64,000 bases of DNA, from NCBI RefSeq assembly GCF_000002075.1, contig NW_004797431.1:378810-442809 (forward strand). The letters run 5' to 3'. A model generated the notes under the pieces. The model did not search any database and had not been told where the DNA came from. It was given only the letters and a program-made list of their open reading frames with translations. The number at the start of each line of letters is the position of its first letter. The first letter of the stretch is position 1. Made by a program: the position numbers and the translations under genes. The stretch is from Aplysia californica. Taxonomy: Eukaryota. This document shows, piece after piece, positions 42,199 through 43,872 of the stretch.

Positions 42199-43872
42199 CT
42201 AAAAAATCTCGTGAAATTCCACAAGGCTGAAGATATTCTCACAGATGTAGCGTTGGCATAAGTTAATCTTTTTAGAAACATTGCGTTCATCACAGTTCTT
42301 TATTTTTACGGCAAATTCCGTCTCTGAATCCCTATCCTGGTTGGCGTAGACGGGCTCATGAGACTTACTGCCCAGTTTTTGTCCCAAAGATTCGTAACTC
42401 TCACATATATTAGTAAATGTTTTTTGTTTCCCTAGTCTGTCCATCCCCTTCAGTTTGCTTGAACGGGAATCGAATGTTCCATTGCTATCACAGGTCCGAG
42501 GTGATATCGATGTACAGAACACACCATCATTACTGGTTACATATGTGTCAGAAGAAAGCAGCACAGCGTCATTAAAGGCGCTGACTGTTTTAAGGGTACT
42601 GAACGCATTGTCAATAGAACTTTTAAAGTTTGGCCCTGAGTCCTGGAATTGACCAACTATCTTCTCGACCTGTCCACACACTGATGCTGACATGGCGAGG
42701 TCACTACTTACGCTAGTGGTCAGAAAGGAATGTTGCAGGACTTCGGCGGCCGAGTAGCGGGCTTGGGGGTCAACAACCAGAAGGTGTTGGATCAAATCCA
42801 GGGCGCTGTCTGAACACAACTCTCCAGCCTTCTCGGGAAAACGGTAGTCCCCGCGAAGGATGTCCTGGTACGAGATGATCTCGCAGTCTTCACACGAAAG
42901 ATCCGTGAAGCAACGGTGCTCTTCACATCCACGATGAAAGGGCATCACGCCGAATAGCATTTTATAGAGCATTACGCCGAGACTCCACATGTCACAGCTG
43001 GTGTCATAAGGCGCCTTAGACTCATTGCACATCAAAGCGACAATCTCTGGCGCTATGTAGTCAGGTGTGCCGACAGGCGAAGTCAAAGTGGTCTTCATTA
43101 TGTCCCCTTTTGAGTCTCGTCGAAAAGACGGGTCACTGGCAAGTCCAAAGTCACAGAGAACGAGGGATGTGACCTCCCCTTTCTTTTGGCATAAAATATT
43201 GTCGGGTTTTATGTCCCTGTGAGCTACCCCATCGTTGTGGAGAGTGAGGAGGACGTGAGCAATGGTGCTAATTACTCGAGCAGCCTCTGTCTCACTAAGA
43301 CGTTTACGTGATTCAAGCATCTGACTAAGATCCCCTCCCTCAATCTTGTCGAACACAAGGAAAAACGCATCTCCAATCTCGCCGAATTCCACAAGATTGA
43401 TGATACTTTCACAATTATTGTACCGTTGACAAATGTCTATCTCTTTCAAAACTTTCTTGCGGGTGTTATCATGGCATTTCCTAATTATTTTTACCGCGTA
43501 TTCTGTCCCTGATTCTCGGTCCCGAGAGGTGTAGACAGAACCAAAAGAACCACTGCCCAGTTTCTCACCCGTAAGCTCGTACCTCTCACAGAAACTGGCG
43601 AACGTGGTTTGTTTTACTTGTCTGTGATTTCTCTTTAGTTTGCTTGAACTGGAATCGAATGTTCCACCGTTATTGTTATCACACTCTCTACGCGAGATCG
43701 ATGTACGGAACACACCGTCATTGCTTGTTGTGCTTGTGTAGGGAGTTCTCAAAACACCGTCGTTACAAACTTCATTCGTTTTCAGGATACTGCTTTTATC
43801 GTCACAGTATGGCTCTGCGTCCTGGATTCGTCCCCTCTTTCTCTTGACCTGTCTAAACACCGTTGTTCTCAT
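42199..43872 (-). CDS. Intronless MNK (MAP kinase-interacting kinase)-like Ser/Thr kinase, 557 aa
   Basis: GSGSFG, YAVK, HRDIKPDN, DFG, LTSPVGT, APE, DMWSLG; MNK-type Cys insert GCEEHRC..SCEDC; basic N-terminus KRKRGR; single exon. Confidence 0.9.
   Translation of the reverse strand: MRTTVFRQVKRKRGRIQDAEPYCDDKSSILKTNEVCNDGVLRTPYTSTTSNDGVFRTSISRRECDNNNGGTFDSSSSKLKRNHRQVKQTTFASFCERYELTGEKLGSGSFGSVYTSRDRESGTEYAVKIIRKCHDNTRKKVLKEIDICQRYNNCESIINLVEFGEIGDAFFLVFDKIEGGDLSQMLESRKRLSETEAARVISTIAHVLLTLHNDGVAHRDIKPDNILCQKKGEVTSLVLCDFGLASDPSFRRDSKGDIMKTTLTSPVGTPDYIAPEIVALMCNESKAPYDTSCDMWSLGVMLYKMLFGVMPFHRGCEEHRCFTDLSCEDCEIISYQDILRGDYRFPEKAGELCSDSALDLIQHLLVVDPQARYSAAEVLQHSFLTTSVSSDLAMSASVCGQVEKIVGQFQDSGPNFKSSIDNAFSTLKTVSAFNDAVLLSSDTYVTSNDGVFCTSISPRTCDSNGTFDSRSSKLKGMDRLGKQKTFTNICESYESLGQKLGSKSHEPVYANQDRDSETEFAVKIKNCDERNVSKKINLCQRYICENIFSLVEFHEIF

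What the first reader, a model, noticed from the sequence alone, without database searches (positions are those of the whole stretch)
42199..43872. Intronless MNK-like kinase with DFG in place of MNK's DFD and no MAPK-docking tail
Seen: one 1674-bp exon with all catalytic motifs intact, a basic N-terminal patch (RQVKRKRGR), a four-Cys insert after the DMWSLG helix (C-x4-C-x5-C-x2-C), DFG at 43144-43152, one SP site (LTSP) in the activation loop, and no LARRR-type C-terminal motif. Known: MNK1/2 phosphorylate eIF4E, bind eIF4G through an N-terminal basic patch, carry a Zn-binding Cys insert, have a DFD motif tied to autoinhibition and dock ERK/p38 at the C-terminus. Inference: a lineage-specific retrocopy that kept substrate-targeting features but lost MNK regulatory features, possibly a MAPK-independent eIF4E kinase.
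Basis: partly seen in the sequence, partly recalled or inferred. Interest (0 to 1): 0.75.

Follow-up and report, generated by a model that had tools for sequence, protein, structure and literature searches.

The report
Sea-hare-specific intronless MNK-derived kinase gene
This is an intact, selectively constrained copy from a family of at least 18 intronless kinase genes that arose from the translation-control kinase MNK in the sea hare lineage, and whose odd C-terminal tail is read-through into a dead tandem copy of itself.

Summary

- **A family, not one retrocopy.** The genome is Aplysia californica. It holds 18 near-full-length intronless paralogs (46-67% identical) plus decayed fragments. 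All 18 carry D-[F/L]-G, none carries DFD, and all end soon after the kinase domain.
- **The parent gene exists.** The canonical MNK lies on another scaffold. It has GT-AG introns, DFD and a C-terminal LAKRR motif.
- **Origin.** With named mollusc MNKs, the family nests among heterobranch gastropod MNKs on a very long stem. This placement is sensitive to sampling.
- **The tail is junk.** Residues 394-557 are the start of a second head-to-tail unit that is frameshifted and dead.
- **Selection.** Unit 1 is under purifying selection (dN/dS about 0.25, against 0.73 for the dead units).
- **Doubtful "kept" features.** The aa 7-15 basic patch is not at the MNK position and is not conserved. The second Cys of the insert is unique to this copy; the family keeps C-x2-H...C-x2-C.
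- **Expression.** No reads covered the gene in two polyA RNA-seq runs.

eIF4E-kinase function is untested. First-stage notes flag the same kind of gene on three other pieces of this genome.

The parts
42694..43872 (-). Unit 1: the intact coding unit (aa 1-393). It comprises a 95-aa low-complexity N-terminal region, the kinase domain, and a 9-aa linker ending ...SSDLA.
   Evidence: ORF. Unit boundary from the self-alignment and the DNA alignment. dN/dS 0.20-0.31 against paralogs.
42721..43569 (-). Protein kinase domain (aa 102-384) with all catalytic motifs. DFG is at 43144-43152, the activation-loop LTSP at 43075-43086, and the Cys/His insert at 42883-42927.
   Evidence: Pfam PF00069, E 8e-64. 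Motif coordinates. Best PDB relatives are MNK1/2. AlphaFold2 pLDDT is 83-97 over aa ~88-390.
43588..43872 (-). N-terminal region (aa 1-95). It includes the copy-specific basic run RQVKRKRGR (aa 7-15) and the decayed MNK-position polybasic patch KLKRNHRQVK (aa 78-87).
   Evidence: No Pfam family. pLDDT below 50 for aa 1-82. Alignment A1 shows which patch sits at the MNK position.
42199..42693 (-). In-frame tail (aa 394-557). This is the first third of tandem unit 2: its Met at aa 394, its N-terminal region, and a decayed N-lobe with Gly-loop GSKSHE. It ends at a frameshift-generated stop.
   Evidence: 52% identity to own aa 8-166, E 7e-43. No Pfam hit. pLDDT mostly below 50. 3 of 3 SNPs seen here are nonsynonymous.
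41503..42198 (-). The rest of unit 2: kinase-domain remains in shifted frames, with stops. It is a dead copy.
   Evidence: tblastn finds remains in other frames. The DNA alignment to unit 1 gives 792/1114 identical (71%), with indels of 2, 1, 10, 1, 1 and 5 nt. Homology to paralogs runs down to 41503.
43873..44286 (-). 5' flank shared with paralogs. Inferred to be a candidate 5'UTR or promoter; this is not shown.
   Evidence: 72-77% identity to the flanks of L002, L003, L004 and L007 over 230-440 nt. A weaker match to L003 reaches 44435.

Best explanation
The ORF is a functional-looking member of a lineage-specific family of intronless kinases derived from MNK in Aplysia californica.

Origin (inferred). 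An ancestor of the family arose from the canonical, intron-bearing, DFD-type MNK of heterobranch gastropods. The most likely route is reverse transcription of a transcript that ended near the exon C/D boundary, which would explain the loss of both the introns and the MAPK-docking tail. The sequence then diverged very fast. DFD changed to D-F/L-G, and the Zn-site ligand set changed to C-x2-H...C-x2-C.

Spread (shown). The family was multiplied by tandem and segmental DNA duplication to at least 18 near-full-length loci.

This locus (shown). It is a head-to-tail dimer without a stop codon between the units. Unit 1 (aa 1-393) is intact and under purifying selection. Unit 2 is dead. The ORF simply runs 164 codons into unit 2 until a frameshift creates a stop.

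Mechanism (inferred). Unit 1 encodes a catalytically competent Ser/Thr kinase with an ordinary DFG. It therefore lacks the DFD-linked autoinhibition and lacks stable ERK/p38 docking. It probably still depends on phosphorylation of the conserved activation-loop S-P site by a proline-directed kinase.

Substrate (unknown). eIF4E is possible for the family. It is doubtful for this copy, because the eIF4G-binding-type polybasic patch at the MNK position is degraded.
For: Identity and family
- MNK1/2 are the best PDB relatives, 205-214 bits against 141 for the next family, and the Cys insert aligns.
- 76 matches in the own genome. 18 loci (L001-L018) carry a single-frame match over the kinase domain at 46-67% identity.
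- D-F-G in 10 of 18, D-L-G in 8 of 18, DFD in 0 of 18. A stop inside the kinase domain occurs in 1 of 18.
- All 12 close hits in the 5.8-billion-protein set are Aplysia californica. The next hit is 43% identical. A word-free search of 1.84 billion representatives gave the same picture.

Parent gene
- The canonical MNK on scaffold C1774 has exons flanked by GT-AG, ICDFDLASG, TPELLTPVGSAEYMAPE, CGEECGWERGEACQDC and ...LSALAKRR.

Phylogeny
- In the tree with named molluscs: Mollusca 98/98, Gastropoda including the family 95/97, heterobranch MNKs plus family 94/99, family 100/98 with a stem of 0.78.
- The AU test disfavours placing the family outside the canonical MNKs (delta lnL 11.7, p 0.041).
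- The family shares heterobranch-only residues in 29 of 89 cells (2 of 6 columns nearly fixed). It shares caenogastropod-only residues in 2 of 75 cells (0 of 5 columns).

Locus structure and selection
- Tail and unit 2.
- L001 unit 2 groups with L002 unit 2 (96/97), so the dimer predates that locus duplication.
- dN/dS for unit 1 is 0.20-0.31. On the same 152 codons, unit1-unit1 gives 0.30 and unit2-unit2 gives 0.73.
- The 5' flank is shared among paralogs.
- The kinase domain is modelled with confidence; the N-terminus and tail are not.
Against: - No expression was seen. 0 reads fell on 41540-44600 in two polyA RNA-seq runs of about 14.8 million reads each. Their tissues are unknown to me and the stretch held no positive-control gene.
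- The Aplysia family proteins come only from genome annotation sources.
- Polymorphism in unit 1 is 3 nonsynonymous to 2 synonymous, which is uninformative.
- Retroposition hallmarks are absent. No poly(A) remnant was found in 0 of 9 loci checked, and the canonical N-terminal exons could not be found for comparison.
- The nesting is sensitive to sampling. In a smaller set without named molluscs, the AU test did not reject the family lying outside canonical MNKs (p 0.09).
- When six very long-branched unnamed short MNK-like proteins were added and only one outgroup kept, the canonical MNKs formed a clade (98/99) that excluded the family.
- Foldseek ranked CaMKII, CDPK and phosphorylase kinase structures first. 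No MNK entry appeared among the rows shown.
Confidence: 0.75

Rival explanations
1. One reading: a retrocopy that kept MNK's substrate-targeting parts and works as a MAPK-independent eIF4E kinase.
For: - The kinase domain is MNK-derived with intact catalytic residues.
- There is no C-terminal docking motif in the ORF or in 10 of 10 Aplysia family proteins.
- DFG replaces DFD.
- Human MNK1b and MNK2b, which lack the MAPK-binding domain, are described as seemingly independent of ERK/p38 (review PMC7215568, passages read).
- Other family members (P0006-P0008, P0121) keep a strong polybasic run at the MNK position.
Against: - In this copy the MNK-position patch is decayed (KLKRNHRQVK).
- The aa 7-15 basic run is neither homologous to the MNK patch nor conserved in paralogs.
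- The L-T-S-P activation-loop site is kept in 7 of 7 closest relatives, which argues for continued control by a proline-directed kinase.
- It is a family of 18, not one copy.
- No transcript was seen.
- There are no data on eIF4E or eIF4G binding.
Confidence: 0.12
2. An unexpressed, decaying pseudogene whose long ORF survives by chance.
For: - 0 reads in two polyA RNA-seq runs.
- The last 164 codons are junk from a dead unit.
- Many family fragments with stops and frameshifts exist elsewhere in the genome.
- Unit 1 SNPs are 3 nonsynonymous to 2 synonymous.
Against: - Unit 1 has dN/dS of 0.20-0.31 at dS 0.7-1.4. The adjacent, equally old unit 2 accumulated at least six frameshifting indels and several stops, and shows dN/dS 0.73.
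- All catalytic motifs are intact.
- 17 of 18 paralogs keep open kinase domains.
- Neither of the two resequenced individuals carries a disrupting variant.
Confidence: 0.1
3. An old, separate short MNK-like paralog clade, shared with other organisms, rather than a recent derivative of the heterobranch MNK. Intron absence would be secondary or ancestral.
For: - Five to six unnamed short (311-359 aa) tail-less MNK-like proteins exist in ENA, Logan and JGI records.
- They group with the Aplysia family at 96/96.
- With them in the set, the canonical MNKs form a clade that excludes the family.
- The AU test was not significant in the first data set (p 0.09).
Against: - Those rows have end branches of 0.6-1.6, so long-branch attraction is likely.
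- Their own profile scores canonical mollusc MNKs higher (353-370 bits) than the one Aplysia family protein among the 120 rows listed (P0005, 337 bits).
- They carry DFN, DLN or DFD, not DFG.
- They share 1 of 36 heterobranch-only and 0 of 13 gastropod-only residue cells, against 29 of 89 and 9 of 35 for the family.
- Without them, the family nests in gastropods at 95/97 and the AU test gives p 0.041.
- No family member came up in either protein search from any named organism other than Aplysia, although canonical MNKs of eight other molluscs are in that protein set.
Confidence: 0.1

Closest known systems
Canonical MNK (MKNK1/2), including Aplysia Mnk, the eIF4E kinase studied in Aplysia neurons (PMC3760813, passages read, which cites Ross et al. 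2006; that paper itself was not read)
   Same: - The kinase domain is closest to MNK1/2 (214 and 209 bits).
- The MNK-type insert between the DF[D/G] motif and the activation loop is present.
- The Cys-rich insert after helix F aligns with MNK's.
- One of the two proline-directed activation-loop sites is kept.
- The family nests among gastropod MNKs.
   Different: - DFG, or DLG in 8 of 18 paralogs, instead of DFD.
- No C-terminal region and no L-x-x-R-R docking motif.
- No introns.
- At least 18 copies instead of one.
- The polybasic patch is decayed in this subfamily.
- The family's Zn-site ligand pattern is C-x2-H...C-x2-C.
- A very long stem branch (0.78, against 0.006-0.07 for heterobranch MNKs).
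Human MNK1b / MNK2b splice isoforms (review PMC7215568, passages read)
   Same: They lack the C-terminal MAPK-binding domain and are described as seemingly independent of ERK/p38. The family's homology to MNK stops about where canonical exon C ends.
   Different: The b isoforms are splice products of the normal gene and keep DFD. Here the truncation is fixed in separate intronless genes. That the parent transcript was a 'b-type' form is my inference, not shown.
Intronless retrogene-type kinase families such as TSSK. Recalled; I saw only the search listing of PMC6905558.
   Same: Intronless CAMK-group kinase genes, multiplied in a lineage, often with narrow (germline) expression.
   Different: A different kinase family. 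Germline expression of the Aplysia genes is only a guess.
Unnamed short tail-less MNK-like proteins P0138, P0145, P0302, P0180, P0181 and P0183 (ENA/Logan/JGI records without organism names)
   Same: They are 311-359 aa, end right after an H-P-F motif, have no docking tail, and show a fast-evolving MNK-type kinase domain. They group with the family in some trees.
   Different: - They carry DFN, DLN or DFD, not DFG.
- They lack the heterobranch-specific residues the family has.
- Their profile prefers canonical mollusc MNKs.
They are probably independent derivatives.

Membership tests
MNK (MAP kinase-interacting kinase) family | Kinase domain closest in sequence to MNK1/2 and inside the MNK clade | tested here: met
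   MNK1 scores 214 bits and MNK2 209 bits, against 141 bits for the next family. MNK plus family forms a clade at 98-99% against CaMK1-like outgroups.
MNK (MAP kinase-interacting kinase) family | DFD instead of DFG at the start of the activation segment (feature as stated in review PMC7215568) | tested here: not met
   DFG at aa 241-243. 0 of 18 family loci have DFD. Aplysia's canonical MNK has DFD. Two proteins in the set that sources name MNK, from Amphiura and Opisthocomus, also show DFG.
MNK (MAP kinase-interacting kinase) family | Cys cluster (Zn site) insert after helix F | tested here: met
   Four Cys at aa 316, 321, 327 and 330 align with the MNK1 Cys cluster. Family-wide, only three Cys plus a His are conserved: C1 18/18, His 17/18, second Cys 1/18, C3 and C4 18/18. 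Metal binding itself was not tested.
MNK (MAP kinase-interacting kinase) family | Two Thr-Pro sites in the activation loop, phosphorylated by ERK/p38 | tested here: inconclusive
   Canonical: TPELLTPVG. ORF: KTTLTSPVG. The second site is kept as S-P and the first has lost its Pro.
MNK (MAP kinase-interacting kinase) family | N-terminal polybasic region just before the kinase domain (NLS and eIF4G binding) | tested here: inconclusive
   At the homologous columns the ORF has SKLKRNHRQ-VKQ, against RRRKKKRR-type runs in canonical MNKs and KKRKRRQRK in other family members. The aa 7-15 basic run is elsewhere and is not conserved. Binding is not testable here.
MNK (MAP kinase-interacting kinase) family | C-terminal MAPK-binding motif (LARKR / LAQRR type) | tested here: not met
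   None after the kinase domain in the ORF or in 10 of 10 Aplysia family proteins. Present in 8 of 10 canonical MNKs examined and in Aplysia exon D.
MNK (MAP kinase-interacting kinase) family | Phosphorylates eIF4E when bound to eIF4G | not testable with these tools
   No biochemical data. Only the canonical Aplysia Mnk has been studied (PMC3760813 passages).
Retrogene (processed copy of a spliced mRNA) | Continuous coding sequence where the parent gene has introns | tested here: met
   The parent has introns after ...AVK, after ...LGIIL and after ...HILTR, with GT-AG ends at the first two. The ORF is continuous across these positions.
Retrogene (processed copy of a spliced mRNA) | Poly(A) remnant and target-site duplications | tested here: not met
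   No A-run or A-rich tract within 420 nt after the stop in 0 of 9 paralog loci. Target-site duplications were not searched. At dS of 0.7 or more, such marks would be expected to have decayed.
Retrogene (processed copy of a spliced mRNA) | Each copy is an independent insertion without shared flanks | tested here: not met
   Paralogs share 270-560 nt of 5' flank and sit in local clusters. The copies therefore spread as DNA. At most the founder was a retrocopy.

The most novel reading that the evidence does not exclude
A sea-hare-specific clade of about 20 genes descends from one processed copy of a C-terminally truncated MNK transcript. It has undone the MNK hallmark DFD, rewired the zinc site (Cys to His), and shed MAPK docking. 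It is kept by selection as a set of differently regulated kinases. The members that retain the polybasic patch could be constitutive or alternatively gated eIF4E kinases, in an animal where MNK-eIF4E control of translation is a classic model of plasticity. The in-frame, stop-less head-to-tail arrays would be the way the family grows and sheds units.
Probability: 0.25. Interest if true: 0.6.

Novelty: new variant of a known kind. Interest (0 to 1): 0.42.

Why it matters
MNK is normally a single, slowly evolving gene in invertebrates. Heterobranch MNKs here are up to 97% identical over 173 residues. Its DFD motif, zinc site and MAPK-docking tail are treated as defining features.

Aplysia offers a natural experiment. 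One lineage of MNK copies lost the introns and the docking tail, reverted DFD to DFG or DLG, swapped a zinc ligand, multiplied to at least 18 loci, and still evolves under constraint.

There are two practical consequences:
- For kinase biochemistry, it gives ready-made variants to test what DFD and the tail do.
- For Aplysia neurobiology, it warns that 'Mnk' reagents, inhibitors and eIF4E-phosphorylation read-outs may not report on a single kinase, if any of these genes is expressed in the tissues studied.

Expression is the missing piece.

Tried and rejected
- **Expression.** The three runs that 'hold' the stretch and were guessed to be RNA turned out to be DNA for the two I laid. X1 and X2 showed flat depth of 50x and 57x over 41471-44600, with contigs up to 186 kb. 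They say nothing about transcription. The two true polyA RNA-seq runs gave 23 and 16 laid reads, all within 40000-41539 (a repeat) and mostly partial. None fell on the gene.
- **Fold search.** Foldseek on the model returned generic active CAMK-group kinases (CaMKII, CDPK1, PhK, DCLK1) rather than MNK. I take this as uninformative for sub-family assignment.
- **Canonical N-terminal exons.** tblastn on C1774 with unnamed mollusc-like MNKs and with family N-termini found nothing upstream of exon A. I could not test whether the family's N-terminal 95 aa derive from the parent.
- **Poly(A) remnants.** None in 9 loci.
- **Trees.**
  - Searches left the family's position inside MNK unresolved, and the AU test gave p 0.09.
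  - The tree with named molluscs resolved it (AU p 0.041).
  - Adding six long-branched unnamed proteins and dropping one outgroup overturned the nesting.
  - I dropped near-duplicate rows for speed. One search dropped L005, L006, L016, second Ciona, Zerene, Trichonephila, second Rotaria and one outgroup. further dropped L012, L013, L017, Rhabditophanes, P0014, P0020, P0021 and the short unnamed rows. One search dropped Opisthocomus, Cydia, one Babylonia, L004, L015, P0015 and one outgroup.
- **Rolling-circle or circular-RNA origin.** I considered this for the stop-less head-to-tail units and did not test it. Unequal crossing-over within an array explains the remnants equally well (for example L002's unit made of the first 14 and last 13 codons).
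- **Polymorphism.** The data (8 SNPs in the ORF) were too few for a test.
- **Literature.** Searches found nothing on an Aplysia MNK-like expansion. This covers only the held library. No supplementary files were seen, so gene lists in genome or kinome paper supplements could mention these genes.
- **Spliced model.** A joined, spliced model of the canonical MNK was not built or searched. Its exons were used one by one.
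Full report
**What is there.**
The ORF listing gives a 557-aa ATG-started ORF on the minus strand at 42199..43872. It is the only ORF longer than 232 aa in the 64-kb window. Pfam places a protein kinase domain at aa 102-384 with E 8e-64.
- basic run, aa 7-15
- GSGSFG, aa 106-111
- AVK, aa 126-128
- HRDIKPDN, aa 218-225
- DFG, aa 241-243, which is 43144-43152
- LTSP, aa 263-266
- APE, aa 274-276
- DMWSLG, aa 294-299
- C-x4-C-x5-C-x2-C, aa 316-330

No L-x-x-R-R motif follows the kinase domain. 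The only additions are that the gene lies on the minus strand and that a second [ST]P (GTPDY, aa 269-270) sits in the activation segment.

**The tail is a dead second copy.**
Residues 401-557 align with residues 8-166 of the same protein at 52% identity, E 7e-43. At the DNA level a second complete unit follows the first without any spacer (...GACCTCGCC|ATG...). It is 71% identical (792 of 1114 aligned bases) and broken by indels of 2, 1, 10, 1, 1 and 5 nt and by stops. The ORF's stop codon is produced by a frameshift in a T-run of unit 2. The tail has no Pfam match, and AlphaFold2 models it at pLDDT mostly below 50. The kinase domain, by contrast, reaches 83-97. A separate first-stage note (s1-682785) had seen this read-through, and I confirm it.

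**Which genome, and how many copies.**
The closest proteins in the 5.8-billion set are the window's own product and 11 proteins that NCBI names 'MAP kinase-interacting serine/threonine-protein kinase 1-like [Aplysia californica]', at 44-66% identity. The best hit outside Aplysia is 43% identical (835 proteins at E<=1e-20 among 8000 scored, 120 listed).

A six-frame search of the window's own 927-Mb assembly gave 76 matches (78 of 230 candidates scored). Eighteen loci (L001-L018) match the kinase domain in one frame at 46-67% identity. Another dozen or so places hold fragments with stops and frame changes. L004, L005 and L006 are nearly identical to each other (L004 against L005 is 99.2%) and may partly be assembly duplicates.

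Several loci sit in pairs 3.5-29 kb apart on one scaffold. L001, L002, L003, L004 and L007 share 270-560 nt of 5' flank at 72-77% identity. The family therefore spread by DNA duplication, not by repeated retroposition.

**Family traits (18 loci).**
- D-F-G in 10, D-L-G in 8, DFD in 0.
- A stop inside the kinase domain in 1 (L012).
- L-T-S-P in L001-L007 only.

All family proteins end 10-37 residues after H-P-F, unless they read on into a following unit. The polybasic run at the MNK position is strong in P0006-P0008 and P0121 but decayed in the window's subgroup. The aa 7-15 basic run aligns with DQIETMRGR and GQVDLMRGH in paralogs.

**The parent.**
A fish MNK2 finds its best match on scaffold C1774, at 61% identity. 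Four exons were located, with GT-AG boundaries read at the first two introns:
- exon A: ...KEFAVK
- exon B, 174 aa: contains ICDFDLASG and TPELLTPVGSAEYMAPE
- exon C: contains CGEECGWERGEACQDC and ends ...ATPHILTR
- exon D: ends ...LSPPGLSALAKRR

Exon B alone scores 238 bits to MNK2 structures and is 97% identical to the MNK of the snail Bulinus. So Aplysia has an ordinary DFD, docking-competent, intron-bearing MNK. This is the Mnk studied as an eIF4E kinase in Aplysia neurons (PMC3760813, passages).

**Phylogeny.**
Against a CaMK1-like exon of the same genome (named) and other kinases, MNKs plus the family form one clade at 98-100% support. The family itself is monophyletic at 88/89 to 100/98.
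- The first data sets left the family's position inside MNK open, and the AU test of 'family outside all canonical MNKs' gave p 0.09.
- After a profile search supplied named mollusc MNKs, the tree followed taxonomy: Mollusca 98/98, Gastropoda 95/97, and heterobranch MNKs plus the family 94/99. The family sits on a stem of 0.78 substitutions per site. The AU test then gave p 0.041.
- A rare-change count agrees. The family shows heterobranch-only residues in 29 of 89 cells (two of six columns at 12/15 and 15/15). It shows caenogastropod-only residues in 2 of 75 cells.

Against this, six unnamed short tail-less MNK-like proteins have end branches mostly of 0.6-1.6. They attach to the family (96/96). 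With one outgroup, they pull the family out of the canonical clade. Their own profile prefers canonical mollusc MNKs (353-370 bits) to the one Aplysia family protein listed (337 bits). They carry DFN, DLN or DFD, and they share 1 of 36 heterobranch-only cells. I read their attachment as long-branch attraction, but the nesting is not beyond doubt.

**Selection.**
Unit 1 against its nearest paralogs gives dN/dS of 0.20-0.31 at dS 0.7-1.4.

The unit tree puts L001 unit 2 with L002 unit 2 (96/97). The dimer is therefore older than these two loci, and in both loci unit 1 stayed open while unit 2 decayed. On the same 152 codons, unit1-unit1 gives 0.30 and unit2-unit2 gives 0.73.

Two resequenced individuals differ from the reference at 8 sites in the ORF. 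Unit 1 has 2 synonymous and 3 nonsynonymous changes, and the tail has 3 nonsynonymous. None disrupts the ORF.

**Expression.**
Runs X1 and X2 are DNA, with flat depth of 50x and 57x. In two polyA RNA-seq runs (about 14.8 million reads each read), no read lies on 41540-44600. The tissues are unknown to me and the stretch holds no control gene. This is 'not detected', not 'silent'.

**How it probably works.**
- Shown: an intact, constrained MNK-derived kinase domain with an ordinary DFG, no docking tail, and a junk C-terminal extension.
- Inferred from the stated roles of the MNK features (review PMC7215568, passages): loss of DFD-linked autoinhibition and of stable ERK/p38 docking, with continued dependence on phosphorylation of the conserved S-P site.
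- Unknown: the substrate. eIF4E is plausible for paralogs that keep the polybasic patch and doubtful for this copy.

**Novelty.**
The genes are already predicted in RefSeq as 'MNK1-like'. Three full-text searches found no description of the expansion. First-stage notes on three other pieces of this genome describe similar genes. I rate it a new variant of a known kind, of moderate interest, limited by the lack of any expression evidence.

Noticed in passing
window 40000-41540: A very high-copy repeat abuts the 3' end of dead unit 2. Summed contig word-depth is 5,000-340,000 in the two DNA runs, against about 50 over the gene. The few RNA-seq reads laid fall only here and fit only partly.
   Followed up: no
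window 19439-20134, 24176-24871, 33938-34633 (minus strand): Three copies of a 232-aa open frame with near-identical starts. The scan already has a note on it (s1-682763).
   Followed up: no
L002 (G000:C81) about 1340-1422: Upstream of its intact unit, this paralog keeps a remnant unit made of the first 14 codons fused to the last 13 codons of a unit. The arrays once had at least three units and lose them by internal deletion.
   Followed up: partly
L003-L008, L014, L018: Eight of 18 family members have D-L-G rather than D-F-G at the magnesium-binding motif, while otherwise keeping open kinase domains.
   Followed up: no
P0009 (Aplysia, = L015/L016 region): The N-terminal region of this paralog is built of many tandem copies of a 7-8-residue unit (PPTTCDV-like).
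   Followed up: no
P0033 (Amphiura filiformis), P0045 (Opisthocomus hoazin): Two proteins that sources name MNK1-like and MNK2-like also read CDFGL at the DFD position. DFD is therefore not universal among annotated MNKs.
   Followed up: no
P0138, P0145, P0302, P0180, P0181, P0183 (unnamed ENA/Logan/JGI records): Short (311-359 aa) tail-less MNK-like proteins with DFN, DLN or DFD and very long branches. They are possibly independent MNK derivatives in other organisms.
   Followed up: partly
P0144 / P0283 (Sinanodonta woodiana): Two near-identical 341-aa DFD-type MNK proteins that stop right after the kinase domain, listed on one chromosome record of a freshwater mussel.
   Followed up: no
L004, L006 (G000:C1790) and L005 (G000:C227): Three copies that are nearly identical to each other (L004 against L005 is 99.2% at the DNA level). 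They are either very recent duplicates or assembly duplicates.
   Followed up: no
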